Both the position numbers and the translations under genes were made by a program. Source: Fimbriosthenelais zetlandica (Eukaryota). From it: a stretch of DNA of 64,000 bases. The stretch lies in the NCBI GenBank assembly GCA_977030845.1, contig OZ365113.1, positions 17,298,001-17,362,000 on the forward strand, in the 5' to 3' direction. A model generated the notes under the pieces. That model was not told where the DNA came from. It searched no databases and was given only the letters and a program-made list of their open reading frames with translations. The stretch's first letter is position 1. Every line of letters starts with the position of its first letter. Of the stretch, positions 1 to 33,570 are shown piece by piece.

Positions 1-3000
1 AATGTGCTATGATGAGGGCAGCATTGTTATTTCTTCACAATAATACAATGTAGTCTCACTCAAAGCAAATTTTATGATGCAAGCGTCTGGAATCGTCTTC
101 AAGTGGCCCTGTTCGGACGATTCATTCAACATTAGCTCACATTTTGATTTGATTGCGCCGTAAAGTCGAAAAATATTTAATATTTTGAGTCAAATAATCA
201 TCATATCTCAACGTGAACATTGCCAATCAATTTCAAAGCCTGATTACAATTAGGAAAACCGGTAACAGGAAGTCCTAGATGATACTAATGTGATTGACTC
301 CAGTTTGCTGAAAACAATGGAAAATACGGCGATTGAAAACTTTTATATTATGCATTCATTAAAAGACTTCTTCGTGCACCGAGGCTGTTACATCAAGAAA
401 ATTAGTTCTTGCACAATGCCCGTTTGACATTAAGCTTATTGCGAGGCAAGTAGGAATCCATTTACTTGGTATAGACTAGCCACTACTTTCCAAAAGGTCA
501 AGGGATTGGCCTTTTAAGAGCCTGCAGAGAAAAAATGAGTATCATTTCAAGGGAAAGAAGAGAGCTGCAATAGGAGAAGACGGTGATGTTAATTATGCTG
601 CTTTACTATATGGCAGCTGTGGGACCTTCGTGACTTCAGCCTTCAGCTCTATACTGCAAGTTGTCTATCTGTATTGTACCCATTTTCCAAGAGTTGGATA
701 CTTGAAACTATATATCCAAACTTGTACAATTTGTATTGCCTTATTCAATGCTTAAAACTTTCATCAAAAATCTGCATTTGTATTGGCCTCATTCTATGCT
801 TAAAAGTCTTATCCATCGCTCTCAGTTTAGGGCATAAAATGCAAATGATATATGATTTCTTTGTATTATTTTCATGTTGCCTATAAGCATTTTGAGGATT
901 TAAAAGAGTATTTTTTGTCAACATACCAGAGTGTGAAAGGTAGTTCTCTACTTGGAAGGTCGCTGCATGGGTTAGATTACAAGATCCGAAATCTAAAACC
1001 AAACTTTTGTATGGTACAATGTGTGGTGGGACTGGGGAGTTGGTGGGATGGGGAAAAGTTCATACCATCGATGCTGAAAACTAACATTTTAGTTTGAACT
1101 CCCGCTTAAACATCTCTCCGATGTATTTGTATTCCCAGGAGGCATGGTAGTTGTTTGCTAGAAGCCAAGAAAAGAGTTATGGCTTGTATATTATGTGATT
1201 TCTCGTGGAGTAATCTACGGTATTTGCAGAACCTGGCATGCGGGCTCACATTTGAGTGCTGGCAGTGTTGCCGCTGGGACATCCAACACCAACCCAGTAG
1301 TGCATAGAGATTAGTGGCACTTGTGGAGGGCAAACAGTTCAGGAATAATCTATCACAGAGTTGTCAGTACCTTCTTTTATAACTCTCAATTATTCATTAC
1401 CAAGTCACTTTTTTGTCCCCATTTCAATAGTGCATGCAGAAAGAATCATAGACTCACCGGCATGAATAGATTTTTAAAAAGAAAAATCGACTTGTCTGTA
1501 ATCAAGAGTGATATATTACCATCAGGTTTAGATAAGTTAGAAAATCCATATTTTAATATGCCTTGTGTTCAAACAGATCACGAATTCACCCAATGGGTAT
1601 TCTCCAAGGGAATTGATCAAAGGCCTTTTAGCTGGTTGTACAAGATAATATCTTTTACTGTCAATGAGGGAAGAGAAAGAACAAGAGCTGAGTTGGCTCA
1701 GGACATGCCTTCTTTTTGGCAACACACTTCTGGTCAGTGCATGAACATTAGGACAATAGGAATCAGTGGCTGCTATAAGCAGTAACCTTTGGGTATGTAC
1801 TAAATAGGAAAGACCTGTGTAATGGGGATTACAGTTTATGTCCTACTATCCCCAAGAAATTTGATTGCTTATGAAAATCTATATTTATCTTGTAAGGCTC
1901 ATTTATTGGAATTATAGTCAATCAGTATTCTAGCTTTGAATAACCACTGACAGCCACTTGCCTTGCAACTGTGGGAAAATTGACCAGTTAGAGGCAGTCA
2001 AACTGCTCGGTTTAAGTGAGCTGGGCATGAGATACCAAGAGATGTCCTAAGTACAGGACTCTAGTTATAGGTACAAGGCCTTCTCCGTTTGGCGGCAGTC
2101 CAAGGACGTATCGAGGATGATCTATAGATGCAACATTTCCTTCACTGTAACATATATCAAACGTTAAGCGTGAGATCCACTGAAACATGGTCTAGGTGTG
2201 CCATGACGGCGGGACAGCAGGTGGTAGAATTCCATAGTAACTCTACATGTATCCATGTATTGCCACTAATGTATATAGTTACCAGATATAGTGACTGTGC
2301 TAGATTGTCTTAAAAGTTAAGCCATCATTAAGTAACCCCATGACATGTCTCATGCATTATGTGAAAATGCCATCCGATAAAACTGAAATAAAACTGAAAT
2401 ATAAAATTAATCTTTCGTTGAATTCACCAAAACGTTCCATCAAGTGGCAACAAACTAGGTAAACATGGCCATATATTTTCAAAGTGCATTTTTATGGAGT
2501 TTGACAATCCATCTTTATTTTGTTTATCGTGAGTGAAGGCATGTAAACCGGGCAGTTTTTCATCAAGCCGTCTGGCAGTTCGCCATGCACTCTCCCCATT
2601 ATTGTATACTACACTAATTCAAACCTCATGTCTCAAGGTCACATTTTTGTTCAGTTTCCCCAATTATTTCCCGGGATAAACTGACGGAGTATGCAATGTT
2701 CTTTGTCACAGGCGCCCTATTACTCACATATATTTTTATAATGAACACTGCATCCACAAAAAGGGGTATTCAGCTGGTCAACATAATACTTTCCTCAATG
2801 GGAATGCCATCTTTCCGAATCTTAGCTTTCAGTTTTTCGCAAGCTGTCAATATATAATATATAAGCTTTCAATGTCAAGCATTGACGCTTGTAGAAAAGG
2901 ATGGTAAACAGATCTGGGGCATTTTCAGGTCATCAGACAAATCCTCCCAACTCAATCTTTTGGAATCACGAAGGCCAGTACAGACCATAGGTGCCCATCC

Positions 3001-6000
3001 CTGACTGATGCCCGCCTCCATATTGAGTTAGCCCTGAGAGTAAATGGCCCGAAACATGAAGCAACTATAGGCCCGTCTTTATGGGGGGTCTGCCCTGTGC
3101 TGGAGGGGTGTATAATCCAATACCATTAAGACTGAAGGGTGCAGCTGCTCTTCCCTGAATCTCTTGCCCCATCAGAGCAGAGTTCAGGTTGCTTGTGCAG
3201 CCCACTGTGGACATTGTTAAAACGTAAAGCAATGACAGACAGACGGATGTTACCAAGTGGGAAAGACTGTGCACCCCAACAACATATCTCTCTTGGCTAG
3301 ACTATCAAAAAGTTGTGTCGAATTATATTGCACTGTTATGGTCATGATTGTGTCTCGCTAACAGTGATCTATATCATCCTGTCTGAGGTTATTTGATCTT
3401 CCTGTCTGTTCAGGTTATATTTTTTCACTTTTTATACATCAAATACTGGGAAATATAAGATGCTCAGCTGACACTTTAGAATAAAACATGTGTTCATGCA
3501 TAATACCACATGAAATATTTCCCGTAAATTAAATATCCTCCATCATTTATTTCACACAGGTGTAAAAACTTGAGGAAAAATGTAAAGACCTTTTTGTCAT
3601 TAACTGTCACAAATGGATCAGTGATTATGTTACATTCATCGGGCTGCATGCAACATGGCTACTTTCCTGCACATGTGAATGCTTCTGCGTGATGATTCAA
3701 CACCCAGGTAAACTCAAATGCCTGTATGACTTACATTTTTAAACAGAGAAAATGAAAATATATGGGTTGGCATATGAATAGGTACATTACGTGATAGCCA
3801 GGACTATAAGATGGATGCATACTGATAGAGTTTACCTCATGCACCTGGTAGGAATATCATGATAGACAACAGGTCTTGCTGATATCAGAAGCATATTGCC
3901 AACACAGTACACTATTTATGATTATATAATAAGGAAAACATCACGAAAATTCATTATATTATTTATCCTGCTATTCATCCGATTAAAGTTATGTTACAAT
4001 ATTGGACATTTATTGCTCTTCACAGCCTGTCTTGAATATGTCGTTGTAGTTCATATGTCTCACTTTAAACAGACAGATCTTTCCCAAGGGACATGACCTT
4101 TCCATATTTTACATTTACCATCAAAGAAACTGAATGCACCACACAACTGCACCTCTTTGGGACCCTTCAAACCCTGAAATTCCAATATGCACTTTTTGTT
4201 CCAACTAATCTTTAGCGAGAGTGGACATTTGAGAGGCTGCCACACTATTTATACATCAAATATAAAGCAATTTAATCAGGTGAATAGCTGGTAAACTATT
4301 TGAAACAGATTTAATTGGGGGTAGGCCTAATAAATGTTGATTGACCAGGAGATGTTTTTGTGACGTCAACAACTACTATTGATGAGTCATCCGCCACAAT
4401 TTCTGGAGGTGTCCAAAAGGGAAAGCCCAGTAACATAGTTCCTTCCAGATCCTAGCCTCCTAATATTTTCAGCACATTTCTCCGAGTTCAGATGGACAAA
4501 AAACCAGTATGGTTAATGGGGCTCCACATTGCATTGCAGCCATGGTCCGAAACATAATTAGGAGATAGCTCTGCTTCAATCACCCAAGGCATGTTGCGCT
4601 GAGAAGGAGAGTGAGGGATTGAGAGGGGAATGTCTAGACATCATTATGTATATAATGCACCAGCTCAGGTGCGTGATGGGTGTTTTTGCCACTAAGTAGC
4701 CTCTCTTATATTATATTATATGCATTCCGCCTCCTTCAGGAATTAAAACCTATCCACTATGACACTGGTGTGTTATGCCAATGGCAGATCCTGCAGGAAA
4801 GTGTGCATTTCCGAGGACACTAAGATCAAGGCACCTTTGATCTTATACGAATATAAATATATACGTACGGATATGTTCGTTCCAAAGAGTGGTGTCTGAA
4901 CCCAAACATCTCTACAATAACCTGAGGCAACAGGAGCAAGAGCTGCTCGCACCATGTATCATCAGGGCTATTTATAGCCTCCTCTGCTGAGAGAGTGTCT
5001 CTCCCAAGCACCCAGGTGAACTGGTGTCGGCGACCATTTCAAAGCATTGCCACCGGGTGCACCAAAAGACATCCTCTCTGATCATTCACGATGCTCACTC
5101 TCACCCGTGCTCTCCCACTGCTTTCCCCATCACTGTCTATTCTTTACCATTCTCTCCCTCTCAGATTCCAATATGTTTGTGAATACTTGGAGGGAGCAAC
5201 ACAATGCTTTTAGATCGACAGTCAGGTTGAATCCAGGTGAAATAGGGACTGTTTAAATCCTAAAATAAAATACCTGCATCAGCAATAATGAGGGAATGAT
5301 ACAATATTTTCGGTATCGCTTCGGGAAATTTTAGTTTATAAGTAAATTTTTACTCCAAAAGACCTTTGAATCCATGAAGGACAAACTTTGCACATTAACA
5401 TGTGTTGACCTTCTATTTGACTGCACTGATATTAGATGATATTGATTGAAGTATCCATACAGTCAGACTTGAGTCAATTTGCCCAAATCAGTGTCATTGT
5501 TGTAGGACTATATGTATGTTTAGCCTTGCATTGATTTCCCACCTAGCAAGTGTGTGACAGTATGCCAAGGGAATTCTGCCCGTGGTTCAATCTGCTCTTG
5601 CCTGAGCAGCTCTTGCCTTAGTCCTCTTAACTCACATTTGCAGGTGACTCCAGGTCAAGGTTACATAAGTCTCTATTTATCAATGACTACGGTGGATGTG
5701 TCCTATAAAAACTATAAACTATGCATGAGTAGCCTACATGAACAGGCCTCTTCTTTGCTCTTAATTGAGATTAATAAGATTACATTTTGGGGTTTGGTGT
5801 TAAATACAATGTCACTGGCTTCAGACACACCTAGAGCTTTAATCTCTGTAGGTTCTCAAATCATTTTCAAAACAGTGTAATAATTTTCTTTGATTTGCAC
5901 TGTTTGCAAAATTGAGTTGACATCACAGCTTATGACGTTGTCCATATGGACCTGTACTTTCATGACAGACCATTTTGGTTTCCTATATGCTATCTATAAT

Positions 6001-6198
6001 TTTAAGGCCAAGGTGTATAAAATGGGGGCAGGCAATAAGTAGAACGTCTCGATAAAATAGTCCTAACCAGAGGAATGCATCTTTAATGACGCTCTTGACA
6101 CGAATTAACATTCATGCCTGGCAGTATGAGTCGCCATGATGGCCAAATGATTTATATGCCATGTAGGTATTGACACAAGTTTCTGTGGGAAAGGTAGT

Positions 6199-6345
6199 GG
6201 ATCTGGATGTGGTGGTGGTGGTGCTGCTGCCTCTCAATTCAGTGGTGGTGGGAGGTGGTGGAGGAAGGCCCCTGGTCGCACCACATAGACGCCACCACTG
6301 CATTGACGTCACAGTATCTCCAGCACCACTGTGGTGGTGGTGTTC
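6199..6345. repeat. Low-complexity GTG/CAC-rich tract
   Basis: (GTG)n runs interleaved with CACCAC; this accounts for the overlapping Val-, Trp- and Thr-rich ORFs in several frames. Confidence 0.7.
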
Positions 6346-7103
6346 TGTATAAGCATCCCCCACGTTGCCTTGACACCAGCATCATGGGACTTAAGCAGGG
6401 GACCCATCGTCATCATCTGCACCCACCTTTGGTGCAGTGGTGCCTTGCAAAATGCAGCCATCAAATGCAATGCATTCTCTCCTATACCCATAGCGTCATC
6501 ATCTCCTGCTTATCAGGAGTGGGGAAATCAAATTACCCACACAACTCTTACATCATCAAGATAACTGAGGGCTAAGAGATAGGCTGGAGATCAATCCAGG
6601 GTCCTTGATATTGGATTAAGGTGTTATGCCCTCCTTTCCTTCACGATATGTATCTTTGTTCATATATGCAGCCAGTATTGCATTTGCCCCCATTCAGACC
6701 ATCTTAGATCCATGTCCTCCTAGAAATGTTCCAGTAAAGCAGGGTCATTCCTAATGCAATGATTAGTAAAATAGAGGTCAATTTACCTTTTAATACATAC
6801 TGGCATTCAGGACAAATATGCATGTTTCATATCTTAACGCCATGCCTATTTCCCACATAAGTGTGGAGATATTTTATTCAGGTATAGGCATCAAGGTAGA
6901 TTTTATGAGACCTGCGACATAAATTTTGATTTAATTCCACGTTGCCAGGGGAGTCTTATATTCCAGCTGTCTGCCCCAGCAAAACTAAGCAGATAGAAGC
7001 AGCTGCATGATATTAGAGGTCAGTAGAAATAATCCCCACTGAACGAAGATGGGTGATGATCATAGACGACTTAGTAAACAGTCAACTTGATGGCGCTGTC
7101 AAA

Positions 7104-7383
7104 TGACGTGCGACTATGACTAGAACAAGAAGGATGACGTGCCATACTCATTTTCCTTCCTTCCTCTGGCCATGTCTCTGCTTCCCTAGCGTGCTATGAG
7201 GGAACAAATAGACAACATCAAGCATTAAGAAAGGCCTCTTGTGAAGCGTTTCATGGCCCGTCCTTCCAACAAGCCCTAAGTGGCGTCAGTGTTGCGGGTT
7301 TAGGTGTATGTACTTGGGACGGCGTCATAATCAGTTACGCCATTGATATATAATGTAGATCAATGACGTATAGTTGTGAGTCA
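7104..7383. promoter_or_regulatory. CRE/AP-1 motif cluster (candidate enhancer or alternative promoter)
   Basis: TGACG or CGTCA at 7104, 7135, 7284, 7323 and 7364; TGAGTCA at 7377. Confidence 0.35.
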
Positions 7384-7717
7384 TGTGAATAGTGGGGTTA
7401 TGGGTGAATGATAAATACTGGTGGTCAAGATTAGTGTGGAGGTCAATGTTTGGTCCATTGCCATCACATTACTCATCAATCATCCTTCAGTCTGTGTACA
7501 CTGGCTTATAATATGGTAGGTGTGATGATGGACTTGATTATCATCAGTATATGCCAGGTATTATCTTTGATCTGATTTCAATGACAATATTTGTGTTGGG
7601 AAATTAATTTGTACCTTCGGCTAGAGTTCACCTGCTGCTTATTAATACGGTGGATTTTGTTCCTCCGTCATATCTGTATACTGTATTTCTCAGCTTGTTA
7701 TTCTGTATAATTAATAG

Positions 7718-7742
7718 TTTTTCTTTTCCATTGTAGGTAAGT
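7718..7742 (+). other. Candidate recursive splice site (ratchet point): tttttcttttccattgtAG|GTAAGT
   Basis: Polypyrimidine tract plus TAG (AG at 7735-7736) directly followed by a perfect donor GTAAGT (7737-7742), on the sense strand of a >33 kb intron. Branch-like ttaat at 7711-7715. Confidence 0.65.
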
Positions 7743-10700
7743 TTTCTATGGTTGAGCTTGGAGGTTTGTAAGTAAACTTTACATTTATCATCTGGACTGA
7801 AGGTAGATATAAGGTATTATGAGAGACGAGGCATAAACAAGTCCACACTCACTACCTTTCCCTATTACTATGACCCCCAACTGCAAGAGTGAGTAAATAT
7901 AATTGCGAAACTCACTATAGATATTAGGTTAAGTTATTGTTCCTGATGCAGAAATAAACAGGTCTCGTAAAATCCGTCGGGTTTCAGTCAAAATAATAAT
8001 ATACAATTGATGAAGAAAAGAATCCGGTTTAATTCATTAGAAAATATACGTTTATGCTATAATGAAACAGGGATATTTTTCTTTAATGCTTTCTCGAACA
8101 AATCAGTATCGCCTGTTGAAAACATGGCCAACAGAGGGGAGTCATTGTACAAGTATTTATGTAAGGAGGAAATTACTTGGGAATTTCTGTTACTGCAGTT
8201 TGAAAAACTGCCTCCTCTCTGCTAGCTGCCCAGTCGAACCCTCACAAATACCAACTTTGACAGTGGCTGACACAACCAAGTATAAACATTGCAATAGATC
8301 AAAGTGGGCGTTTAGAGGGCCCTTAGCCCAAGCTGCAGGTCCCAAAGGGGTCCCGCCCATACATTTCTATATTACTTTCTGTCAGAAGCCGACTGTGCAC
8401 ATTGGATTGAGTGCAACGTAGCAAGCAGTGCAGTAATTGTTCAGGTCCGGCCACGGCCATTGCTCTTTGGATTTTTAGGTGATTTGATAGCAACAAGGGA
8501 CAGGGAAAGAAAACACAATGGATCGACTCGTGCTTTGATTTAAAATCCTTCTAGTATATTGTCAGAGAATCAAAGCAAGATTTATCCGCTTTCAAACAAA
8601 TCTATCTCTCTATATAAAAAAACATAGCTAAAGACTTTAATTTTGATCGTGATTTCTATTCGTGAACTAGCCAACAAAAGTTTTGGACAAATCACAAGAA
8701 AATCACCTTAAATCTGTTCTCCTAAAAGGTCGAGGCTAAATCTTTGTAGGTTTGGCCTTAGTTCTCCAAGACAAATTGGTTACTACTTCACTTTCAGAAA
8801 TATTTTATTTCTTCCCAAAAGAGCAGTCCATGACTGCTCCCATGGATTAGAAATTGCCAAATGAATGCATTATGAACTAATTGTCATAGATATGATGAGA
8901 AAATCACCATAAACACACAACACAGTATCCTGATCCGACATACTTGATCGCCGTATGTTGATAGAAATTCCACATCCGAGTCTCCCTTTGAACAAAGTGG
9001 AGAGGGCTGATTCAATTTAATGATCTAAATGACTGAAAAAGACCATGTCATCCATACCTCACAAGCCCTATCTCCCTTCAACTGCCTTTTCAAGCACTGT
9101 CCCTCCAATGACACTTTGAATTTGTTCAGCATCAATTGAATTACTAGCTCAGAAACAGGCTGGCAGTCTGAGCTGCTATGCTTCTCTATATTGTATGATA
9201 GATTTCACTGCGAGTACATGGGAATCAGTGGGCTGAGTTGATTAGTGTGTCTATAGGGAGCAGCTCATTGCAGGCATGTCAATAGTCGCCATATCTTCTC
9301 CACCCTTATGTCAATCTAAGGCGCTCTTCACAAGCAAGCAGTTATCTTTGATGCTAATGGCTTGATGGTAGCGGTCCTATCGCCTGTCTGCTTAATCAAA
9401 TCTAAGCCTTGCGCCCGCACCCATTTGAAATAGCATTGTTGGTGGATGAAGAGGCAAAGTTGCAGCGGCTCTACCAATATGTCGGTCCATTTCCATGAAG
9501 GATCTGTGAATTATTCATTCTGCCTCTATCAAGACAGATATCTTGTTTAAAGTAGTGCAGTCAGATATGATATTTATCAACGATTCCTCTGGTTATATTT
9601 CATCACTGTCAACACATTCTATTCTTGTCAATGCTGAATAAAAACAGAGACTTGGAAAATTGAATGCGGATTGCACAAGCAGATGGGTATATAAAGTTGG
9701 GCAGACTGGCAAAAACTCTGATATGCCATAGTTCCTGTGTATTTTATGGAAAACTTTTTTTTAACTCAGGACTATGTCCAATTTTCGGCTGTATCTGGTC
9801 TGCCGAAATCTGATGGCATGGGGGGAATGGTTATAGGAAATGGATTGCCTGATCATATCGGACACGTAAATGTTTGCTTATTCATATTGCTCAATGTGCT
9901 TGGCCATCAAAGGTTACACGAGGCCTATACATACCAGATTTCTCTTGGGTTGACAAAAATGCCTACCAAGAATGCATGTTTTGTCTCGTTCTTATTTTCA
10001 TAACAAGATTATAAAGCATAAAATCATGAAATCCTTTTGACAGTAATTTCGAGAGGAATCCATCCTTTTGTCCCCATAAAATCTCATTAGGGGTGTTTTA
10101 AACGTCAGTGTTTTGGGGAGGGTTGGTCCATGATCAAGCTGCTTGGGACATCTTCCGGCAGTCATGTTACACCTTGCAACAACAGAATTTATCAATTATT
10201 ATCTTATTCGGGATATGCCCTCACATCATCAGTCATTTACCACATCTTGTCTGCGCCAAAAGTGAACAGTCGTCACTCAATAAGAACAGAACCTGCTTTA
10301 TCATTCTTGCTTATTCATCTCTAACTTAAATCTTCACCATAAAGCCTACTTTAGACCCGCTCCACGTAAAGCCAAGCGGAGTAAGAGTTCCACTCCGACA
10401 GTTGTGAGGCGAGGGTAACAAGTTTATAGGGGTGCCATGTGTAAATTATTTATCATTTTACACCCTAACTTGCATGGCTTCCTACTGTAAAAGTGTTGTT
10501 CCTATTGGTTCTGTCATTCCGCGTTTGGCAATGTTAACCATGTAAATGGCAATTCCAGGGCAAGGCCTGATGCAAATGAAATGTAAAGTCATGTCAATAC
10601 TGCCATCACCTACTTGTGGTAATGACTGACTGGCCAGGCCATCCCAAGTCTCTCCGTCCAGTCAAGACCATTTCCCAAATGATTATGTGAAAGGGCAGCG

Positions 10701-13700
10701 CTTTACGACACCCTTGAGGTTATGACTGTGCCTATGGACAATTGGTAACAAATGACGCTTTTTGTAACTGCCAATGCATGTGGGTATATGGGTTCCTTTT
10801 AAGCACTAAATTATAAGCACTGTACTAATATAGTTGTCAGCTGTAAATTATATATATAACCCATACAACTCAATGTCAATGTAAATAGTTTCCTCCTAAA
10901 ATAGAAGTGCTGTTTAAAATTAATTGCACGTTGGAGATTTTATGATGTTAGAGATGGAAATGTTTCTATTATTGCATCTATGAATTCAGGGCCCGCCTCG
11001 CTCACAGATTAACGCATTTTCCACTTAAATTCCAATCGCCACTATCCATTTAGTCCACCATCCTTCCCCGGAATCAGGTCCCAACATGAAGCGATGCGGG
11101 CAGAACGTCTTTAACAGTATTGACAAGGCCTTCCCCCTCGCTAAGAGCCTTATAGAAGGAATTACAAGCATCGATTTGCCAAAAGTAGATGTAAAATATC
11201 AAGCAACCCAATTCCACGAAGCTGAAGAGGAGATTAGAAAGATGCATTGATCAATGGGAAATAAGAGGGGCATCCATTCTGCAGATTGGCGACAGAATCT
11301 GCTCATGTGTAAACCAATAGGCATTGCATGAGGATATTAAGCCAATTACAAAGGACATGAGAAACTCTCAATTTTTTAGCTAGACTCTAGAGCACCCCCT
11401 CCCCACCCCATTTCACCGCTATAAAATATCCGAATCCCTACGGGATCTATTAAGTACCAGGGGAAGCCGTATATACGTGGAGTGCATTCCATCGCTGTCA
11501 TTCCTTCTACAAGTTTAATGTTGCCTCTGTTATAAACTCCGATAAATGCGTATGTATGAGAGGGAAAGCCGCCATCTTTATAATGCATGGGCTAAAATAA
11601 TGGCTGCCGTGGGGAATATTATACAGGTCTTTGGATGTTTTTCCCAACACATTATCTTGATTGTATACAGTATAAGCTTAAGGGTTGGACTTGATTCCTA
11701 GAATCATATAACTGAAGATAGACACGGAAGGGTATGATATCGATTCTTCATAATGACATTGCCAGAACTTTTGTATTGGTCCTCTATATTGGACCGAGAC
11801 CATCAATACTAGATAAGACCTTCTGAAAGTACCATCTACAAAAGATAATCGTTAAGTTGTTAATAAGCTCGTGGCATACGAATTATGGACTACTCATGGA
11901 CCTTGCAATGCATTTTATATGAAAAGCTGTGATTTGTATTGTTTTCCCCGCAAGACTGAGGATAAAGAATTCATACTGGGCGATGGTCATAGTCAAGTGA
12001 CATAATGCCTTGTGGTGACCTGCCGTGCTGTCAACTGTTTATCTTGATAAACAGAGAGCCATCAAGCTATACATTTCATTCTTCCCAAACATGTATCTCT
12101 CTCATAAGCAATGCTCTGGAAATAACCTCTGGTGCTCCGGCCTCGTATCATCCGCAACAGATGGAGGCAGACTGTGTGGCTATGAGGTCCCTGTCAGAGC
12201 AAAAATCAGTCAAAACTCCAACAGTTGTATATCAAGTTTAAAGCATTCTTGACAAAAAATGCCACCTCTAAGCAGTGGACCCTGCAGTGACTTAACATCT
12301 GGCGGGGAATTATAACCATATTGTTGCAAAGAATAACTATCATCTTTTGTTACATATCCACCAAAGCCATGGCTAAGTCTATTAACCTCTCAGTTACAAG
12401 CAGTGCTTCCAACAGCTGCCTCCAACTTCAATCTCAAATTCAATTATCTCTCACATTGGCAAAACAAATCTTTTAAAACTAAAATTGATATGTGTGAAGT
12501 ACCTTTACAATTGTACTTTCCATTGCAACTTAAAAACCAGTTGCATATGAGGAATAGTATTTCTATAGTGAGGAAAAAGTGATGGGGATGCTTTGCACCA
12601 TGGCGATGGTGACAACCACTGCTTGAGGAACAATACTAATTATTAAGCTGATGAGAGGAAGGCTTTCGACCTAATGGTATGGCCGACATGATGGATGGTC
12701 CAAAGACATGGAGAATCACCCTCCTGGGTCATGGCAATGCTCTGATGGACCATCTCCATTGATGTATGTCTACAAATATATGTCTACAAATAAGAAACTG
12801 CAGAAAATGCAGGTAATAAAATTGCTTTTGTATTGGCAAAATACTGGAGATATATTCCAGATATTTTTCATATATTTTAATGGACTTTAGTCTTCTCTTG
12901 TGGATTTTAAAGTCCAATCTGTGTGCAGATGAGTCACCATAATAATTATTACTCGTAGGCAGACACCTACTGCTCGAAGAGAAAGATCCCAAAATAAACA
13001 TGGTGTAACTTATTATCTTACTGTTTCAAAGACCAGGTAAAAAAGCCTGGCAGAGAGCAGTCATTTTATCACCCAAGTTTTCATCATCCGGGGGACTCCT
13101 TTTATACTCACTACCGGGTTCAAATTTCTTAATTTCTTCGCAGTGACAGCCATGCTTCAAAAATGACCCCAAGTCCTGCAAGTGACCCATTTGATGTGAG
13201 GGTTTCAGGTTAATGAAACTCCAGATCAGTTGCAACCTGACCTCCCTCTTGTTTGGAAAAGTGAACTCGTCCTTTGATGAGTGACAAAGGAAGAGGACAT
13301 TTCTTGGTCACGTGACTATGAGGTCCAGATCAGAGAAAAAGTTGGGTTGAAACTTGATCAGGCGGATCAAGACCTCAGGTGGAAAATGTTAGGCAAAAAC
13401 AATTAAAACCAGTCCCATGTTCATTATTGAACAAACATTTTAGTTTTTACCAAAAATTTCCAGGTTTTTCTTCCACTTGATAGAACATTCACCGAGGTTG
13501 CCTTGGAGATGTTGTCAGGCATAACATGTCCTGTTATGTTCTACTCACCAATAAAAGATGACCACATTGAGGAGCTTAAGCAGCTACAAGGGGAACACAG
13601 GTGGCCAACCTATGCCCATATCCATCCTGGTCTTAAACCCAGCATTCGCTTGTGTATATTATTGGCTGTCAGTCTTTTCCTGCTTGTCAGGCTTGTCACA

Positions 13701-15247
13701 AGTGGTCATCAATTTCCCTCGCCATGAGCAGTTGTTCATGAGCTTAAACGATAACTGGCTATGGAATAAGTATGTGTGTGTTTTATTCTACATTAATATT
13801 AAGCCAGTAGAGTAGGTTTTAGTGGTGCCATGAACCTATCCATGCAATGTACTATGCATGCCCTCATCACATGAAATGTGCCATATATCTCCATTACTGA
13901 AGTGCCCACAGTGTGGCGTACATTTATGGTCCCCGGGGGTACTATACTCCCTATGTTCTACACAATTACCATGGTATTTACATCAAAGAATACATTATTG
14001 TATTAACATGACCCTTTCAGCAAAGCATTCGCTCAAGTATCAAGAATAGTTAATGGATGCTGATGAATTAAAGATTCAAGACACAGAAAGCGAATAACAC
14101 TATTTTAAAGATAAAGATGAAAATAGAGGAAAAAGTGCTGAATTTGTGGTGCCTCAATTACTAATTAACGAAGGGTATGTATGATGACTGCTGTTTGGGT
14201 ATTATGTTAATATCAGTGCGTTGAGCTACAGACAGGGGTCGTTGAGCTCAGCTGTCATCAGTCCTTGCATCGCCTGCTCCATGATAGGATCTGAGGGCGT
14301 GTAATGGTTAGTGGTATATATATACTCACATGTGAATACCTAGATGTATGTCTAAGAGATCCTAACGGCTTAGCCTCCAGGCATGGAGATCCTCTCCTCA
14401 GGCCTGTCATCGCCAGATAACACCTATACAAGTATATAGCTGCTCATCTCCTCACAACTAAGAGCAACTCATGAGGGGAGGAAGATAACAGTTCAGGATC
14501 TCTCAGAGCTAAGCCCTCCTCCCACATTTTTTCACACAATTATAATGTCATTTATTCACAAGGTTTTGGAATTATTTTACATCCCACCAAAGTGCTATAA
14601 ATGCGTCGAAATCATCAGAAATATGAGCCTATCTATTTTGAGAGGCTTGGAGTTGAATGAATTTATAATTTGTTTTTACGATGCAACACCACATTTTATG
14701 GTGAAGATATCTAAATGAGATGACTTAACTTTTCATTGATAACAAGTTGAATGATATTTTGGTCTATGACCTGAGTAGGTGCAACATGTGTACTATGAGT
14801 ATACTAGATGAGGTTGTACACGGCAGGAGACCTGCTCTTTTTGTCTGAAGCAGTACAAAGCTCTTGCAGTGCAAGTAAATATCACTTGTGGACATATGAT
14901 ATTGATGATACAGGATCACAGGTGAGTGCTGTATGATGAGCTAGTACTAGATGAAGGATAGGAGAATTGTCAAAGGCTGCTTCAACTGCCTGTACAGACA
15001 TCATTAGTGTCGCTAATTGTAGGGTGTTCAACACTCAGTGTCTGAACAAACTTATGTCATGCTTCTGCATGTATGTGCAGTGACAACCATGCGTAGCTGC
15101 ATGGTGAAAATAATGGCCACTTAGCTATGTTAAAACATACATGTATTATAATACATCTGAGTTCAAGAGTTCATTTCCATTGCGACATTTCTGCAGATTG
15201 GTTATTATGTTGGATGAAATTCCCATGGCCATGAACTTCATTTCATG

Positions 15248-15528
15248 TTTTTTAGTTAGAATTTTTATAGAGCCATATTATTGGTGAAGCCAGCTCAAAC
15301 TCTTGATGATTCGAGTTTTCAGCTGGTAACTCTTTATCTACATGCTCATCTATATTGCCTTCTATGCAATATATATTTCTAGGTGCATGTACTCTAGAAC
15401 GTATGTACAACACCCCTGAGGAGGGAGGCATTGGAAATGCATTGGGCAGCTCGGGGATTGAACCGCCGACCCATCGATCATTGGTCAATCACCCTGCGTG
15501 AGCTGAGGCTCTAACCAACCAACTTCCC
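15248..15528 (-). mobile_element. tRNA-derived SINE family 1, copy A
   Basis: On the minus strand: GGTTAGAG (A-box side) and GGTTCAATCC (B box), a body of about 190 bp and an A-rich tail. Clearly alignable to 19738-20015 (roughly 80% identity by eye). Confidence 0.8.
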
Positions 15529-18390
15529 TCATGACTCGTGAAAGGGGTAACATTGTGATAGATTAAGATTCTGATCAAAAATCATCTTGGTTTTCGATGT
15601 GTGATTAAGATGCCTGTTGTACAGTTTGAGAGCCTACAAGAACAATGGGGGTTCCTTGCCTCATTCCCTATGAAAGTGAACTGGGCAACATGTGCATCAG
15701 CATTGGTGGGTCCATTGTTCTAGGACCACATAGTAATCCTACGACCTGACTACATGGTCTTTGGAGGAGTACCTATGAGTGATAGTGCTTGTCAGAGTAT
15801 GATGCTAAGCATCTATAACTCATGCCCACAAATATGGTAATCACACAGATTGCCGTGTTTCATTACCATAATTGATTAATTGGGCTACAAGCTTGTGAGA
15901 GAGTGGAAAGGGTGGTGCTCTAGGAGTGAATCTCATGATATGATCGACTTGATCATGGGTAATGAGTGTAGGCTCTGAGCATATATACAGTGTGAGGAGA
16001 GAAGAACCCATGTTAGCATGCCGCCATCCTTTAACAGATTCCTTTTGCAGAAATCACTATATGGGTTTAGTATCGTGAGAAGTATTTCATAATTTTGCAG
16101 AAGATACTCTTTATAGTATACCTATAAAACCAATTTAGTGTTTTGGGAATAAGGCATGGTTGGAGAGAGGTAGACACTACATAGAAGCACTAGTTTGCTC
16201 CATGTTGTCTGTGAGGAGCTAACATCAGATGGTTTACAGAATTATTTCTGGGTCACTCATTGATATTTGATGTCTGCCCCCCTGCCCATTTGGTCATAGG
16301 AGGTTGTGGGAACAGCAAGCATGTACTTAACCACTTGGTACCACAAGCATCCCTTTATAAATATCTATTTAATATGCATCTTTAAAATCGGTGGGTGGAA
16401 ATAACATAGGATTAGAATGATGCAGTATTGCTTTCTTTGATAATAGGTAGTAATCTGGTGGTCAATACGGGATTGCTCATGACAGGATATGGTTATGTCT
16501 ATTTATAATCTTAAGGTTTTTAAGATTAACTACTGGGAGTAGGAACAGAACAGAGCATGCATTTATTATGAGTGAAGATCGATATAGTCTTTGATACGTT
16601 AACGTTTTCGATGTCCCAGAAAGGCCAGATACCCAAGGTATATGTGGGTCAATTATTTGAGTACAGAGATGTGGGGAAATTGGCAGCTTTCATGGATTTG
16701 ACTTTACAGCCTTTTGGCAGTCTTCACAAAAGTATGCACTCTCCTTGACCTTGGTGATTTGTTCTTTGGCATTTGATATAGACCTCAGGGTCAGAACCTA
16801 ATACTATTATGACAATAGTTTGAGATCCAAAGATATCACAGATTATTACGAGCTAAACGATTCTAATTCATTTCTGCGGAGAAAATCCCATCGGATTATT
16901 GGTAGTATACATGTAATTGATAGATAATTAATAGTCATCTAATTAGATTTAATTCCCCTAGTGCCTAGGGTAGTGATCTAGCTATAGCCTGAATATAATT
17001 CCGGGCATTGTTGAAATGTATCAAATTAGTTAAGGAATCAGCATATTTAAAGGAAATTCCTGCTTGTTTATAAATCAAACATCCTGAAAATAAGGAATTC
17101 CAGGCAAAATTGAATATAGAATTATTGCTATCAAGCATATGTTGTTAAAAGTGTTCATTTGTCCATGCCTCCATTCCAAGTCTGGAAATCTACCACACCC
17201 GAAAATAAGTGAAATGAGGTTCCCAAGCCTCAGACAAAACCTACGCCTGTTTGTGGGAAACAAACAGGCCTGATGGATGGAGTCTCTCTGCATCCTTCCC
17301 TGCCTTTGGATCAACAGAAGCTCATGTTTGTGGGGACCCCTGTGCATTTTTACTGAAAGTCTTTTTGTGAAATTTTCTTCCACAAGAGGGAAGTTCTCTC
17401 CTCAGTCACAGGTCTTTTATTTCCAACAGGACCGTTCATCACTGGGACGGCAAAGTCAAGTAGAAAGATAAAGTATTCCCCATTTGTATCTCTAATTCAC
17501 CCTCTAACTTTTCAATGCTTCCATGAACATGTTAAACCTAATAACTGGGCTTTCAAAGCTTAGTACATCTTTCCAGATGGTTATTTTTCATGAAAAACAT
17601 ATTTGCTTCATCAGGCCCTATAGCATTACTCCAGGTGGAGTACTTGGCCAGGGTATCCAATATATTATAAATACTGAAAACCATTATATGCAGGCGTGTA
17701 GTTGAAGCCTTTGCTTTTCATACTGAGAGGATAAACACCTTCATTTTTATTGCCAACACAATATATATGTGTTATTGGTGACCCAGGAAGCCCCCTGCTT
17801 GCTCTCAACCCATCAAATGTAACACTATTTTAGGCCCTGGAAAAGGTGCTCCTCAGTTATATAGCCAGAAAGTGATGGGAAGCGACTCAGTAGTCTCAGT
17901 ATCATAATTCCTTGAATAAGAAAAATGATGGAACGTGATGTCAGGATCCCAGACAAAAGGTTATCAGAGCATGGCATACCATTGTGATTGCAAGGATGAC
18001 CCTCCAGCTAAATGGGAAGGAGACAAGGAAATGCCAGAGTTGATATAATATTTTTCTCATGGGATAAAGGATTGGCCCGTTCTGCTAACTAAAAATTCAG
18101 AGATGCATTGGTGTAATAACCGGGCAATACCTCTTTGCCACCTGTGACTGTTGCTGGTTGGAAACATTGAATTGGTTATAACAATTCCCGACAGAAAAAA
18201 TCTGTCTATACAAGCGAGGAGAAAATGAAATATGATGGTCCACACTCACGGCGTTTATGCATTATAGAGACTAAAGCTAAGTATAGATGTCAAGAGGAAG
18301 GCAAGTTGAGAATATGAAGTAATTTTTTCATTTGCGACCAAGCTTTTATATGGTACCTAAGTAAAGTTTCCACACCGGGTTCCCACACAA

Positions 18391-20138
18391 ATCAAATTAT
18401 ATCAAACTATATCAAATAAACTGAAATAGAAGTTTAAAAAACACATATATTTTTCCAAATCAAATTACAATGTATTCGATTCTGGAATAACACTTAAAAA
18501 GTATTTGTTAATTGCTTACCTTAGTCCTAGATTAGTCCTTAGTCTTAGATTACTTACTTGGTACAAGTTGTTGGGTAACAACTACAGTCAGGGATGGGTT
18601 GTAAAGACGGTGTCTGTACTTTTATATATGGTGTCTGTTTCCAAAGATTTTCCTCCATGTTTCGGGCCATCCATCTTATGTGATCTCGGAAAACTATCTG
18701 CTCACTCCGACACGTGTCCTGGTCATCATTGTTGGGGTAAGAATCCTGATGCTAGCCTATTTCCACGTCTGGTCAGGTGGGTTGTCGCCCACAGGACCAA
18801 GGGTCATACCTGTGGAAAAGACACCAAACTTACTATCAATTTAAATAATGAAACAGGTAAATAAATGTGTCAAGTTAGCAACATTATAATCTCTAATATT
18901 TATTTCCACAAAAAGTGTCCGAATGTTGACCGAAGCGTATACCTCTTGGAAGGAAAAGATATCATCCCAACAGTATACCAAACATAGTCAGTGTAACCCC
19001 ATGTATATACCCAGGATTGTGTGGGAGAGGGGGTATAGGGGGTTACGTCGTCGACCCCAGATGGAATTTTATAAGGGGTTAAGGGTATAACAGAGGGTCG
19101 AAAAAGGCTATTCTAAAGGGCGGCACATCCCCAGTGATCAAATTATATCAAACTATATTAAATAAACTGAAGTAGAAGTTTAAAAAAACACATCAGGTTA
19201 GATATGATTCACATGATAGCTGCTGACATTAATTTTATCCAAATCAAATTACAATGTATTCGCTTCGGGAATAAGACTTAAAAAGTATTTGTTAATTGCT
19301 TACCTTAGTCCTAGATTAGTCCTTAGTCCTAGATTACTTACTTGGTACAAGTTGTTGGGTAACAACTACAGTCAGGGATGGGTTGTAAAGACGGTGTCTG
19401 TACTTTTATATATGGTGTCTGTTTCCAAAGATTTTCCTCCATGATTCGGCGGTCATCATTGGTGGGGTTGGTGTCCTGATGCTAGCCTAGTTTCGGGCCA
19501 TCCATCTGCACACTCCGACACTATTTCCACGTCTGGTCATGTGGGTTGTCGCCCACAGGACCAAGGACCATACCTGTGGAAAAGACACCAAACTTACTAT
19601 TAATGTAAATAATGAAACAGGTAAATTAATGTGTCAAGTTAGCAACATTATAATCTCTAATATTTATTTCCACAAAAAGTGTCCGAATGTTGACAGAAGC
19701 GTATACCTCTTGGAAGGAAAGAATATCATCCCAACAGTTTTTTTTTAGTTAGAATTTGTATAGAGCCTGTTATGGGTGACTACCAGCTCACTCAAGTTTC
19801 TCGTATGATTTTCAGCTGGGGGCTCTTTCTATGTGCATTACCTTCTGTGCGATGGATATTTCTATAGGTGCATGTGCTCGAGAACATATGTACAACTGTG
19901 AGGAGGGAGACATTGGAAATGCCTTGGACAGCTCGGGGGATTGAACCGCCGACCCTTCGATCATTGGTCAACTACCCTGTGTGAGCTGGCGCTCTAACCA
20001 ACTGAGTTAACTCCCCTCCTTGTGTGGGACAGGGGGTATAGGGGATTACCTCGTCCACCCTAGATGGAATTTTATAAGGGGTTAAGGGTCGAGGTTCGCA
20101 AAAGGCTATCCTAAAGGGCGGCACATCCCTAGTGACCA
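18391..20138. repeat. Two-unit tandem duplication (unit about 746 bp), second unit interrupted by a SINE
   Basis: 18391-18973 matches 19137-19737 and 19017-19136 matches about 20019-20138, with high identity, small indels and an internal block swap. Confidence 0.95.
19738..20015 (-). mobile_element. tRNA-derived SINE family 1, copy B
   Basis: Minus strand head gagtTAACTCAGTTGGTTAGAGCG...GGTTCAATCCC, the same body as 15248-15528, and a poly-A tail (T run at 19738-19746 on +). Confidence 0.85.
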
Positions 20139-20569
20139 TAGAGGGAGAGCTCCCCCCACGGTGTACATTGAATTTAATATTAGGCCTTAGCATACTACTG
20201 GGTCAGCATAGAATTGTTGGAACTAGGCCTACTAAAAGTCAATCTCCTAACCTGGCTTTTATTTTGAAGGGGGGTGTTTGGGTGATCCCAAGTCAAATTC
20301 CCGACTTTCATGGCCGTCAGCCACAATACCAGCTCACTAGCCTATTTAATTCTTCCCCTATTTGTCTCAGCCTATTTAAAAGTTAACAGTGTTTAGCTGA
20401 AATAGTCTAACTCTTATCCTACACAGGTTTTCATTCCCCAACGCAAGTTAATACCCTACTATGGCATTTTGCACCTTTTATCGCTCACTGGTTAGAACCT
20501 GACAATGCCCAGGTTGACAAGTTTGATTGGCTGTTTGTGCCAATTTCAAGTGACTTTGATGGGATAATT

Positions 20570-20759
20570 TTCCTGTGCGCCAGTCACAAACAGCGATAAC
20601 CAAGCCGGCCAGTCACAAACAGCGATAACGAAGGTCCTGTGACCGGCTGAAAAGTATAGTTGTAGCAAGTTGTAGACGAAAGCGTGCTGCCATACCGGGA
20701 ATCGAGCCCAGGACCTCTCACAATAGAAGCGAGTGTTCTAACCACTATACCATCCTGAC
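20570..20759 (-). mobile_element. tRNA-derived SINE-like element, family 2 (tRNA-Pro-like head), with an internal 29-bp tandem repeat
   Basis: Minus strand TGGTATAGTGGTTAG ... CTCGCTTCTATTGTGAGAGGTCCTGGGCTCGATTCCCGG at 20688-20759 with a broken acceptor stem. GCCAGTCACAAACAGCGATAACnAAG occurs twice at 20579-20633. Confidence 0.65.
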
Positions 20760-20872
20760 TCACACTTTCTCATTGCTACCCAGATCACCACACAAGTAAG
20801 AGCATAGATGTGAAGGCACTCAAACTAGGGAGGTGGGTCGGGGTGCGAGGTCAGGATAAAACTAGGCTATGT

Positions 20873-20896
20873 GGGCGGGTGGGTAGGTGGGTGGGG
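20873..20896 (+). other. Potential G-quadruplex GGGCGGGTGGGTAGGTGGGTGGGG
   Basis: Five runs of three or more G with short loops. Confidence 0.55.
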
Positions 20897-21024
20897 AAGC
20901 TTAGTATGGCCACCAAAGGAAATGTACATGGTCGAGTATAACACCGATTAAAGTGAACTCTGCAGGGAGACAAAAATAGTACTTTCTTACCATTTTTGAT
21001 TGGTAAACAGTGTCGGGTATTAAC

Positions 21025-21151
21025 GGGATCAATGACCTCGCCTGGATTGGCTCGGCAGGTTAGAGAAAAGCTATTGACTTCGGGCCTGACGGCCCTCAGT
21101 CATAGCTTTTCTCTAACCTGCCTCGCCAATCCAGGCTCGGTCATTAATCCC
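21025..21151. repeat. Long imperfect palindrome (62/61-nt arms, 4-nt loop), probably a MITE-like hairpin element
   Basis: Arms 21025-21086 and 21091-21151 are reverse complements apart from three TC/TC doublets, one C/A mismatch and one bulge. Confidence 0.92.
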
Positions 21152-24100: not shown

Positions 24101-24673
24101 GATTTCCCTCTTCGCCTCTATATCGGATAGCGAGGATGACACTGTGGGGAGTGGCCATCAATAGTAGCAGCGATCTAATTTATTTTATCGGTCTCAATTC
24201 TACTGCATGTGGCTTTCTGATAGAGTAGGACCTTTTTTTGTGAAGAATGGCCTCGGCAAACAAAGCTTCTGGAATATAGGCAGGTCAGGGGAGATGTCAT
24301 CTGATAGCGGCACTTCTGGAAGTAGGCCGATTACCCCCCTGTCCAACCAGGTTCAATGCCCGTGATAACCTTGTCAGAGGATTGGGTTTGCCAAAAAGGG
24401 TAATCATATCCATCAGGAGAAAATGCACTGGGCTCCTTTTTATCAACGGGGCAGTATGCAATATTCCTTTCAGGAATATGAAAGGGTGACATGTTCAATT
24501 ACTCCTGGACAAAAGTACAACCGCAGATCATGATGTTTTTCTTTCAGGGTTGACATATGTATTGCTGGATTCTTAAAACAATGTCCCAAGTGGCGTTTAC
24601 TAAGATAGTGTATCATAGATATTTATCTTAAATACATGTATCTAACCAGAATTAAAAGATAATAACCAGTGGT

Positions 24674-24769
24674 CAGTGGGGCGTAGCTAAGGGGGGTTCG
24701 GGGGGTAGGTTTTTGACCCCCCCCCCCCCCCACTAATGAGGTCCAGCAAAAATTCTAGCTACGCCCCTG
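24674..24769. mobile_element. Short MITE / non-autonomous DNA transposon with GGGGCGTAGCTA terminal inverted repeats
   Basis: cagtGGGGCGTAGCTA (24674-24689) and TAGCTACGCCCCtg (24756-24769), with internal G and C runs. No clear target-site duplication. Confidence 0.7.
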
Positions 24770-29649: not shown

Positions 29650-29741
29650 TGACGTAAATCGCTGCTAATCTATGACGTGTAGGTCACTATCACCACGTCG
29701 TCTTCATCACAGGTCAGCAAAAAAAAAGAGGTCAAAGGTCA
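29650..29741 (+). promoter_or_regulatory. Cluster of four AGGTCA nuclear-receptor half-sites including a perfect DR1, plus two CRE half-sites
   Basis: AGGTCA at 29681, 29711, 29729 and 29736 (AGGTCA-A-AGGTCA at 29729-29741); TGACGT at 29650 and 29673. Confidence 0.5.

Positions 29742-33111: not shown

Positions 33112-33570
<459 letters not shown>

What the first reader, a model, noticed from the sequence alone, without database searches (positions are those of the whole stretch)
7718..7773. Recursive-splicing ratchet point with a poison cryptic exon in the giant Shal intron
Seen: on the sense strand a strong 3' splice site (tttttcttttccattgtAG, branch-like ttaat about 22 nt upstream) abuts a perfect 5' site GTAAGT. 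In my by-eye scan it was the only AG|GT junction with both elements strong. A second GTAAGT at 7768 would define a 31-nt cryptic exon (7737-7767). Because the intron is phase 2 (GG|), inclusion reads GGG-TAA, an immediate stop. Established: this architecture matches Drosophila ratchet points and vertebrate RS-exons in long neuronal introns. Inference: this Kv4 intron is removed in steps, with the site 25.4 kb from the pore exon. I know of little description of recursive splicing in non-arthropod invertebrates.
Basis: partly seen in the sequence, partly recalled or inferred. Interest (0 to 1): 0.75.

Follow-up and report, generated by a model that had tools for sequence, protein, structure and literature searches.

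The report
Probable recursive splice site, Shal intron
Midway through the 58-kb first intron of a Kv4/Shal potassium-channel gene of a non-arthropod invertebrate, an intron end is fused to a perfect intron start; this is the known fly-style signal for removing a long intron in two steps, and it is probably (about 60%) real here, but there is no RNA or conservation evidence.

Summary
T-rich tract, TAG|GTAAGT at window 7736|7737 and a second GTAAGT at 7768 all lie on the sense strand of a Kv4/Shal gene. The site is 56% of the way through a 57,766-nt phase-2 intron, and inclusion of the 31-nt piece would read GGG-TAA.

One such motif per window is close to chance. However, this genome carries a clear population of fly-type ratchet points. 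Of 249 Y6N4YAG|GTAAGT sites, 42 have a second GTRAGT donor 20-81 nt downstream, against about 7 expected. Thirty-four of these define 37-58-nt cryptic exons, against 2.5 expected. They also form same-strand pairs 15-30 kb apart (P about 1e-7). The Shal site is one of the 42.

It is a borderline member: it has two purines in the last part of its tract, and its 31-nt exon lies outside the enriched length peak. No sequencing run was listed. Contigs of close relatives were too short or came without DNA. Three distant lophotrochozoan Shal introns have no equivalent site.

Verdict: probable recursive splice site (about 0.6), with chance at about 0.3; the poison-exon detail is weaker. It is a new member of a known kind. 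This scan has already noted similar candidates in other genes of the same genome.

The parts
1..33131 (+). Downstream 33.1 kb of Shal intron 1. The whole intron is G000:C19:17273366-17331131, 57,766 nt, phase 2. Its first 24.6 kb and the T1-S5 exon lie upstream of the window.
   Evidence: Exon 1 ORF and donor CTAGG|GTGAGT; acceptor of the pore exon; intron assembled and measured.
7711..7715 (+). Putative branch point TTAAT (A at 7714, 22 nt before the acceptor G). The only AG between it and the acceptor is 2 nt after the A, which is too close to be used.
   Evidence: Read from the sequence. The branch-point role is inferred from the yUnAy consensus, not tested.
7718..7734 (+). Polypyrimidine tract: a 12-nt T-rich run (7718-7729) followed by ATTGT, which has two purines at positions -7 and -4.
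   Evidence: The 3' splice-site PWM score of 12.5 bits is the best on the sense strand. The site is one of 32 Y12N4YAG|GTAAGT sites in the genome.
7735..7742 (+). Candidate ratchet point TAG|GTAAGT: acceptor AG at 7735-7736 fused to donor GTAAGT at 7737-7742.
   Evidence: After ligation to exon 1 the donor reads AGG|GTAAGT and scores 10.3 bits, against 10.7 for the natural exon-1 donor.
7737..7767 (+). Possible 31-nt cryptic RS-exon. If included after exon 1 it reads GGG TAA.
   Evidence: Its length lies outside the genome's enriched 37-58-nt range.
7768..7773 (+). Second donor, TTT|GTAAGT. It is weaker than the ratchet-point donor (4.3 against 10.3 bits by an approximate PWM).
33132..33296 (+). 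Shal pore/S6 exon ((G)YGDMVPKT...KAQK), the 3' partner for the second splicing step.
   Evidence: tblastn with Shal proteins.
53982..60725 (+). Remaining Shal coding exons (about 53982-54173, 54505-54663 and 60435-60725). They show that the + strand is the sense strand through most of the window.
   Evidence: tblastn.

Best explanation
The site at window 7736|7737 is a recursive splice site (ratchet point) in intron 1 of a Kv4/Shal gene.

Proposed mechanism (inferred, not shown):
1. Once the first 32.4 kb of the intron is transcribed, the T-rich tract and TAG are recognised as a 3' splice site. Recognition is probably helped by exon definition against a downstream donor: the GTAAGT at 7768, or weaker GT sites 66 or 77 nt downstream.
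2. Exon 1 (...CTAGG) is ligated to position 7737. This rebuilds a strong donor, AGG|GTAAGT.
3. That donor out-competes the weaker TTT|GTAAGT and is spliced to the pore exon 25.4 kb further on. Nothing from the site remains in the mRNA.
4. If the downstream donor is used instead, a 31-nt piece is included that reads GGG-TAA, and the transcript would be an NMD target.
For: **Anatomy.** All elements are present on the sense strand. It is the best-scoring AG|GT junction in the 57.8-kb intron: sum 23.1 bits against 18.8 for the next.

**Local chance level.** Dinucleotide shuffles give 0.03 sites this strong per intron strand. There were none in 400 kb-strand of random genome, and none on either strand of three other species' Shal introns, 253 kb-strand in all.

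**Genome-wide class.**
- 249 Y6N4YAG|GTAAGT sites, against 107 with a scrambled donor of the same composition.
- 27 have GTRAGT at a gap of 14-44 nt and 15 at a gap of 45-75 nt, against about 3.5 expected for each.
- Controls give 1 of 107 (first donor scrambled) and 4 (second donor scrambled).
- Cryptic-exon lengths peak at 37-58 nt: 34 observed, 2.5 expected, P about 1e-26. This matches the roughly 50-nt fly RS-exon (PMC8605326).
- There are 4 independent same-strand pairs within 30 kb, against 0.08 expected.
- The candidate is in these lists, and it is one of only 32 sites with a 12-nt tract, of which 14 carry a second donor.

**Context.** It lies in the first coding intron at 56% of its length. 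Fly sites favour midpoints and first introns, and 63% of fly introns over 40 kb have one (PMC6110457). The ratchet-point donor is stronger than the cryptic-exon donor, 10.3 against 4.3 bits.
Against: - No RNA evidence: no sequencing run was listed for the intron or for exon 1.
- Conservation could not be tested. The closest relative (99% aa in exon 1) has only a 9.5-kb contig whose intron part does not align. The two ENA relatives came without DNA. Protein-level searches with the ORF spanning the site were blank.
- It is a borderline class member. Two purines sit in positions -7 to -4. Among about 24 such sites in the first 100 listed, none has a second donor in the 37-58-nt peak (counted by eye). 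Genome-wide only two do.
- Its 31-nt exon lies in a length bin that is not significantly enriched: 4 observed, 1.9 expected.
- An equally scoring junction lies on the antisense strand at window 49001.
- The orthologous phase-2 Shal introns of Lottia (38 kb), Lingula (26.5 kb) and a scallop (61.9 kb) have no comparable site. A ratchet point is therefore not a general requirement of this intron.
- The splice-site PWMs are approximations from general knowledge, not trained on this genome.
Confidence: 0.6

Rival explanations
1. Chance juxtaposition. A T-rich run, a TAG and two GTAAGT hexamers happen to lie together in AT-rich intronic DNA, and the spliceosome ignores them or uses them only as noise.
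For: - AGGTAAGT occurs once in the window against 1.77 expected. With a tract it occurs once against 0.29 expected, and 25% of shuffles have at least one.
- An antisense site at 49001 has an equal PWM sum.
- About 107-140 of the 249 genome-wide juxtaposed sites are expected without selection.
- The candidate has two purines in the tract and a 31-nt exon, which are the features of the non-enriched fraction.
- Lottia, Lingula and scallop Shal introns have no such site.
Against: - A chance site would fall on the sense strand of a giant intron only a few percent of the time, and near its midpoint less often still.
- The 12-nt T-rich tract class has only 32 members in 447 Mb, and most T-rich members carry the RS-exon signature.
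- Shuffles give 0.03 such sites per intron, and 0.005 with a second donor.
Confidence: 0.3
2. A conventional regulated poison cassette exon. The acceptor at 7736 and a downstream donor (7768, or the GT at 7803 or 7814) define a small exon. It is included in a fraction of transcripts to lower Shal output through NMD, and the GTAAGT at 7737 is not used as a donor.
For: A 3' splice site and a downstream donor are present. Inclusion gives an immediate stop.
Against: - The exon would begin with a perfect donor that scores 6 bits above the downstream one. Fly experiments show the stronger ratchet-point donor wins (PMC8605326).
- A 31-nt exon is short for exon definition and lies outside this genome's enriched range.
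Confidence: 0.05
3. An ordinary donor of an unannotated upstream exon. The candidates are an alternative first exon from an internal promoter, or an exon of a nested non-coding transcript ending ...TTGTAG|GTAAGT. In this case the AG is exonic and is not an acceptor.
For: AG|GTAAGT is also the consensus exon end. Real donors preceded by pyrimidine-rich exon sequence probably make up part of the 249 sites (inference).
Against: - A T-rich 12-mer plus a branch-point-like TTAAT directly upstream looks like a 3' splice site, not exon sequence.
- No conserved ORF, no Rfam family and no homologue of flanking ORFs was found.
- A transcript starting here would encode only S6 and the C-terminus of the channel.
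Confidence: 0.04

Closest known systems
Drosophila intronic ratchet points with cryptic RS-exons (Hatton 1998; Burnette 2005; Duff 2015; Joseph 2018; Pai 2018; Joseph and Lai 2021, PMC8605326; PMC6110457)
   Same: - Juxtaposed (Y)nNYAG|GTAAGT on the sense strand of an intron over 40 kb, near its midpoint, in a first intron of a neuronal gene.
- A short out-of-frame, stop-containing cryptic exon with a weaker downstream donor.
- Genome-wide, this animal's class has a median cryptic exon of 48 nt, like the roughly 50 nt in flies, and has several sites per giant intron on one strand.
   Different: - The host is not an arthropod. The best named exon-1 matches are an annelid and a nemertean at 86%.
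- There is no RNA or conservation evidence here.
- This site's tract is interrupted by two purines and its cryptic exon is only 31 nt.
- Segments of 32 and 25 kb are longer than the typical fly 9-15 kb.
Vertebrate RS-exons in long neuronal genes (Sibley 2015; Blazquez 2018, PMC6224609)
   Same: Exon definition comes first. The RS donor is then rebuilt and competes with the exon's own donor. Inclusion gives a premature stop. The host genes are long and brain-expressed.
   Different: - Vertebrate cases sit in introns over 100 kb.
- They are few, and their motif is not enriched over the antisense strand (ratio 1-1.5, PMC2773006).
- In this genome the motif class is clearly enriched.
Computational RP-site enrichment in large introns of invertebrates, including sea urchin (Shepard et al. 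2009, PMC2773006)
   Same: It is motif-based inference of recursive splicing outside arthropods: sea urchin has 0.54 RP-sites per 100 kb of sense strand against 0.066 on the antisense strand. The background of about 0.1 per 100 kb agrees with my estimate.
   Different: That study had gene annotation and compared sense with antisense. I had none, and used second-donor spacing and same-strand clustering instead. It named no individual genes such as Shal.

Membership tests
Fly-type intronic ratchet point / cryptic RS-exon | A 3' splice site (pyrimidine tract, YAG) fused directly to a consensus 5' splice site (GTAAGT) on the sense strand | tested here: met
   It is the only AGGTAAGT in the window and the top AG|GT junction on the sense strand. 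The tract has two purines near the AG, so it is weaker than most class members.
Fly-type intronic ratchet point / cryptic RS-exon | Lies inside a very long intron and divides it into large segments, often near the midpoint | tested here: met
   The intron is 57,766 nt. The site is at 32,371 nt, or 56%. Compare PMC6110457.
Fly-type intronic ratchet point / cryptic RS-exon | A downstream donor defines a short cryptic exon of about 50 nt | tested here: inconclusive
   GTAAGT lies 31 nt downstream. The genome's enriched range is 37-58 nt. The 20-36-nt bin has 4 observed against 1.9 expected. Weaker GT sites lie at 66 and 77 nt.
Fly-type intronic ratchet point / cryptic RS-exon | The regenerated ratchet-point donor is stronger than the cryptic-exon donor | tested here: met
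   AGG|GTAAGT scores 10.3 bits against 4.3 for TTT|GTAAGT with an approximate PWM. By contiguous U1 base pairs the two are about equal (my count).
Fly-type intronic ratchet point / cryptic RS-exon | The cryptic exon is frame-breaking or contains a stop | tested here: met
   It is 31 nt long and reads GG+G TAA. This follows automatically from GTAAGT after a phase-2 exon end.
Fly-type intronic ratchet point / cryptic RS-exon | The SA|SD core is strongly conserved in related species | not testable with these tools
   The relative's contig holds only 3.1 kb of the intron. The ENA assemblies came without DNA. ORF-level searches were blank. Three distant phyla or classes lack an equivalent site, which says little.
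Fly-type intronic ratchet point / cryptic RS-exon | RNA intermediates: exon-to-RP junction reads, lariats with a 5' end at the RP, saw-tooth nascent coverage | not testable with these tools
   No run was listed for the intron or for exon 1, so read laying could not be used.
Fly-type intronic ratchet point / cryptic RS-exon | The motif class is over-represented in the host genome beyond chance | tested here: met
   42 sites with a second donor against about 7 expected; 34 against 2.5 in the 37-58-nt bin; same-strand pairs with P about 1e-7.

The most novel reading that the evidence does not exclude
Fly-style zero-nucleotide recursive splicing with roughly 48-nt cryptic exons is a genome-wide mechanism in this lophotrochozoan-like animal. 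On this reading it involves on the order of 100 sites, often several per giant intron, and is therefore probably ancestral to protostomes or bilaterians rather than an insect speciality. The Kv4/Shal intron would be one of its substrates, with an unusually short 31-nt poison exon acting as a fail-safe.
Probability: 0.5. Interest if true: 0.6.

Novelty: new member of a known kind. Interest (0 to 1): 0.45.

Why it matters
Recursive splicing is documented by RNA evidence only in insects and vertebrates. In vertebrates it is rare and its motif is not enriched.

A genome in which the fly-type signature is strongly over-represented would move the origin of the mechanism deeper into animal evolution. 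That signature is a fused acceptor and donor, a cryptic exon of about 48 nt, and several sites on one strand of a giant intron. It would also provide a second, distant system for asking whether long-intron genes need stepwise removal.

The Shal site itself is only one borderline example. The class-level signal is the more useful result, and one total-RNA library would test it. This scan has already noted similar candidates in other genes of this genome, so this finding adds a member and an independent statistical test rather than a first discovery.

Tried and rejected
**RNA evidence.** The look-up of sequencing runs on window 6500-9000 (kind rna) and on exon 1 (kind any) listed no run.

**Conservation.**
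- The closest relative is a Logan contig, L007. Its exon 1 is 99% identical in amino acids and 90.6% in nucleotides. It carries only 3.1 kb of the intron, and that part does not align to any of my intron even with sensitive blastn.
- The relatives at 95% and 89% sit in ENA assemblies that were returned without DNA.
- I searched both protein collections with the 45-aa antisense ORF that spans the site, hoping to catch an orthologous called ORF. No candidate and no hit came back. These blanks say little.
- The Lineus and Pomacea proteins were not on record for a DNA look-up.

**Genome sampling.** I planned 800 kb of random regions. I therefore could not check the host genes or orientation of the other class members.

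**Reversed-pattern control.** The control supplied by the pattern search gave high counts (for example 17 against 27, and 271 against 249). I suspect it is inflated by repeats containing TGAATGGA, but I did not verify this. I relied instead on scrambled-hexamer controls and on the measured GTRAGT frequency.

**Other checks.**
- The strict motif Y8NYAG|GTAAGT gave 215 sites against 90 for the control, but about half are one repeat family, so that count alone is uninformative.
- Rfam found nothing at 6500-9000.
- Complex prediction, structure tools and phage/plasmid searches are irrelevant here and were not used.
Full report
**1. The observation**

The + strand at 7711-7773 reads TTAAT-AG-TTTTTCTTTTCC-ATTGT-AG|GTAAGT, then 25 nt, then GTAAGT.

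The host gene is a Kv4/Shal channel on the + strand:
- The Pfam Shal-type N-terminal motif matches once in the genome, 25.7 kb upstream of the window (54.5 bits). It sits at the head of a 369-aa exon running from the N-terminus through T1 and S1-S5 to ...TMTTLG.
- That exon ends CTAGG|GTGAGT.
- The next coding exon, (G)YGDMVPKT...KAQK, starts at window 33132 behind ttccttccAG.
- The remaining exons lie at about 53982-54173, 54505-54663 and 60435-60725.

Intron 1 is therefore 57,766 nt and phase 2. The candidate junction lies 32,371 nt from its 5' end, or 56%, and 25,395 nt from the pore exon. Joining exon 1 to 7737 reads GG+G TAA. This stop follows automatically from GTAAGT after a phase-2 exon end.

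**2. Chance at the level of the locus**

- AGGTAAGT occurs once in the window on both strands, against 1.77 expected.
- With a pyrimidine tract and one mismatch it occurs once against 0.29 expected, and 25% of shuffles have at least one.
- Using approximate metazoan splice-site matrices (general knowledge, not trained on this genome), the site is the best AG|GT junction on the sense strand of the 88.7-kb locus: 12.5 + 10.6 bits. The antisense strand has one of equal sum at window 49001, cag|GTGAGA.
- Dinucleotide shuffles of the intron give 0.03 sites of this sum per strand, and 0.005 when a GTRAGT must follow within 20-120 nt.
- None reached the candidate's score in 400 kb-strand of evenly spaced random genome, or on either strand of the orthologous introns of three other animals.

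My empirical background is therefore about 0.03-0.1 such sites per intron of this size. This agrees with the roughly 0.1 per 100 kb reported for antisense strands in many animals (PMC2773006). The site is unique in the genome; only a short fragment at 7811-7867 has copies elsewhere. Rfam finds nothing nearby.

**3. Does this genome use ratchet points at all?**

This question turned out to be decisive for the prior. All counts below come from whole-genome pattern searches (447 Mb).

- Y6N4YAG|GTAAGT occurs 249 times. The same acceptor followed by a scrambled hexamer of equal composition (GATGTA) occurs 107 times.
- Of the 249, 27 have a second strong donor (GTRAGT) after a gap of 14-44 nt, and 15 after a gap of 45-75 nt (full list of 42).
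- The GTRAGT frequency measured in 577 kb-strand of this genome is 4.6e-4 per nt. That predicts about 3.5 per gap class (binomial P = 6e-16 and 3e-6).
- Scrambling the second donor leaves 4 hits, two of which are overlaps with GTGAGTG. Scrambling the first donor leaves 1 of 107 (Fisher P = 8e-4).
- The implied cryptic-exon lengths are not uniform. The median is 48 nt, and 34 of 42 lie at 37-58 nt, where 2.5 are expected (P about 1e-26). This matches the "short, about 50 nt" cryptic RS-exon of Drosophila (PMC8605326).
- The sites cluster on one strand at intron-like spacings: four at C10:24.14-24.21 Mb, and pairs at C10:22.71/22.73, C19:20.83/20.85, C21:25.41/25.44 and C21:26.09/26.12 Mb.
- After dropping possible duplications, 4 same-strand pairs within 30 kb remain among 35 sites, against 0.08 expected (P about 1e-7).

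I conclude that a population of fly-type ratchet points with cryptic exons exists in this genome. There are at least 35 of the most perfect kind, and probably around 100 in all. This is a statistical inference.

After I had these results, the scan's notebook showed that other readers had flagged ratchet-point candidates in cadherin, Kv2, EXT1, PRDM3/16, TPST, liprin-alpha, KIF13 and prickle introns of the same genome. Those notes agree with my reading, but I did not test them.

**4. Where the Shal site stands within that class**

It is listed among the 27 and the 42 (C19:17305724-17305773). It is also one of only 32 sites genome-wide with a 12-nt pyrimidine run before N4YAG|GTAAGT. The reversed control for that pattern gives 15. 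Fourteen of the 32 have a second donor within 20-81 nt, against 0.8-0.9 expected. I tailored that pattern to the candidate, so it gives the optimistic view.

The pessimistic view rests on two atypical features:
- **Interrupted tract.** Purines sit at positions -7 and -4 (ccATTGtag). Among roughly two dozen non-repeat sites with two or more purines in that stretch in the first 100 listed, none has a second donor in the 37-58-nt peak (by eye). Genome-wide I see only two that do (TTTTTTGTTGTAG and TTTTCTGTTGCAG).
- **Short cryptic exon.** At 31 nt it falls in the 20-36-nt bin, which holds 4 sites against 1.9 expected (P = 0.13). The second GTAAGT may be coincidence.

Taken genome-wide, perhaps 5% of sites of this quality are functional. 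Several factors push the other way:
- A chance site would lie on the sense strand of an intron over 40 kb only a few percent of the time (my estimate; no annotation was available).
- Fly sites favour midpoints and first introns (PMC6110457).
- The regenerated donor AGG|GTAAGT (10.3 bits) clearly beats TTT|GTAAGT (4.3 bits), as the donor-competition rule requires.

Different reference classes give posteriors from about 0.4 to 0.9. I settle on 0.6 for "functional recursive splice site", and about 0.4 for the specific 31-nt exon.

**5. Attempts at direct tests**

- No sequencing run was listed for the site or for exon 1, so no reads could be laid.
- The nearest relative's exon 1 is 99% identical in amino acids and 90.6% in nucleotides. 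Its introns do not align, which would make it an ideal distance for footprinting. However, it is available only as a 9.5-kb contig.
- Two further relatives came without DNA. ORF-based searches across the site were blank.
- The same phase-2 intron in Lottia gigantea (38.1 kb), Lingula anatina (26.5 kb) and the scallop Ylistrum balloti (61.9 kb) has no junction above 19.6 bits on the sense strand. A ratchet point is therefore not a conserved feature of Shal intron 1 across lophotrochozoan phyla. This is weak evidence against, because fly sites are conserved within a genus rather than across phyla.

**6. Comparison with what is known, and novelty**

In mechanism and anatomy this is the Drosophila ratchet point / RS-exon system. 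It shares the exon-definition and donor-competition logic of vertebrate RS-exons.

Full-text searches found no paper describing recursive splicing in annelids or molluscs, and none linking it to KCND2. The nearest precedent is the motif enrichment reported for sea-urchin large introns (PMC2773006).

The host is a non-arthropod invertebrate. The best named matches to exon 1 are an annelid and a nemertean at 86%, with unnamed relatives at 89-99%.

I class the finding as a new member of a known kind. The Shal site is a plausible but borderline instance, and the class-level signal in this genome is the part worth following up with one total-RNA library.

Noticed in passing
G000 genome-wide (for example C10:24137718, 24163320, 24190487, 24209077, all on the - strand; C19:20827271/20851584 -; C21:25412741/25436309 +; C21:26094806/26124234 +; C10:22709901/22725077 -): 42 sites have a T-rich tract, YAG|GTAAGT and a second GTRAGT 20-81 nt downstream. 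The median cryptic exon is 48 nt. The sites cluster in same-strand groups 15-30 kb apart, which is the signature of multi-step recursive splicing of giant introns. Their host genes were not identified.
   Followed up: partly
G000 genome-wide; none in the window: A dispersed repeat family carries the exact 18-mer CTTTCCTCACAGGTAAGT and accounts for about half of the 215 strict ratchet-motif matches. It would inflate any naive motif count.
   Followed up: no
window 49001, - strand: On the antisense strand of Shal intron 2 lies a ratchet-like junction, ...cactttttatttgttcag|GTGAGA. Its PWM sum equals that of the candidate. I used it as a chance control; no gene is known on that strand.
   Followed up: partly
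window 7811-7867: A 40-50-nt fragment just downstream of the candidate has 86-93% copies on C37, C21 and C13. It is probably a small repeat remnant. The candidate itself is unique.
   Followed up: no
G000:C35:145243-317215 and C29:13774051: Several class members on the small contig C35 are near-identical to each other (179997, 225080 and 275468; 251281 and 287832), and one (317159) matches C29:13773995. This suggests tandem segmental duplication or an uncollapsed haplotype.
   Followed up: no
L032 28610-28796 and 29207-29368 (Lingula anatina Shal): Two tandem copies of the pore exon lie about 600 nt apart. Both follow good acceptors and both begin TTATGG. They look like mutually exclusive alternative pore exons. 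The window has only one pore exon.
   Followed up: no
window 21025-21151: The scan's notebook lists a separate first-reader note on a palindrome here, inside the same Shal intron. I did not examine it.
   Followed up: no
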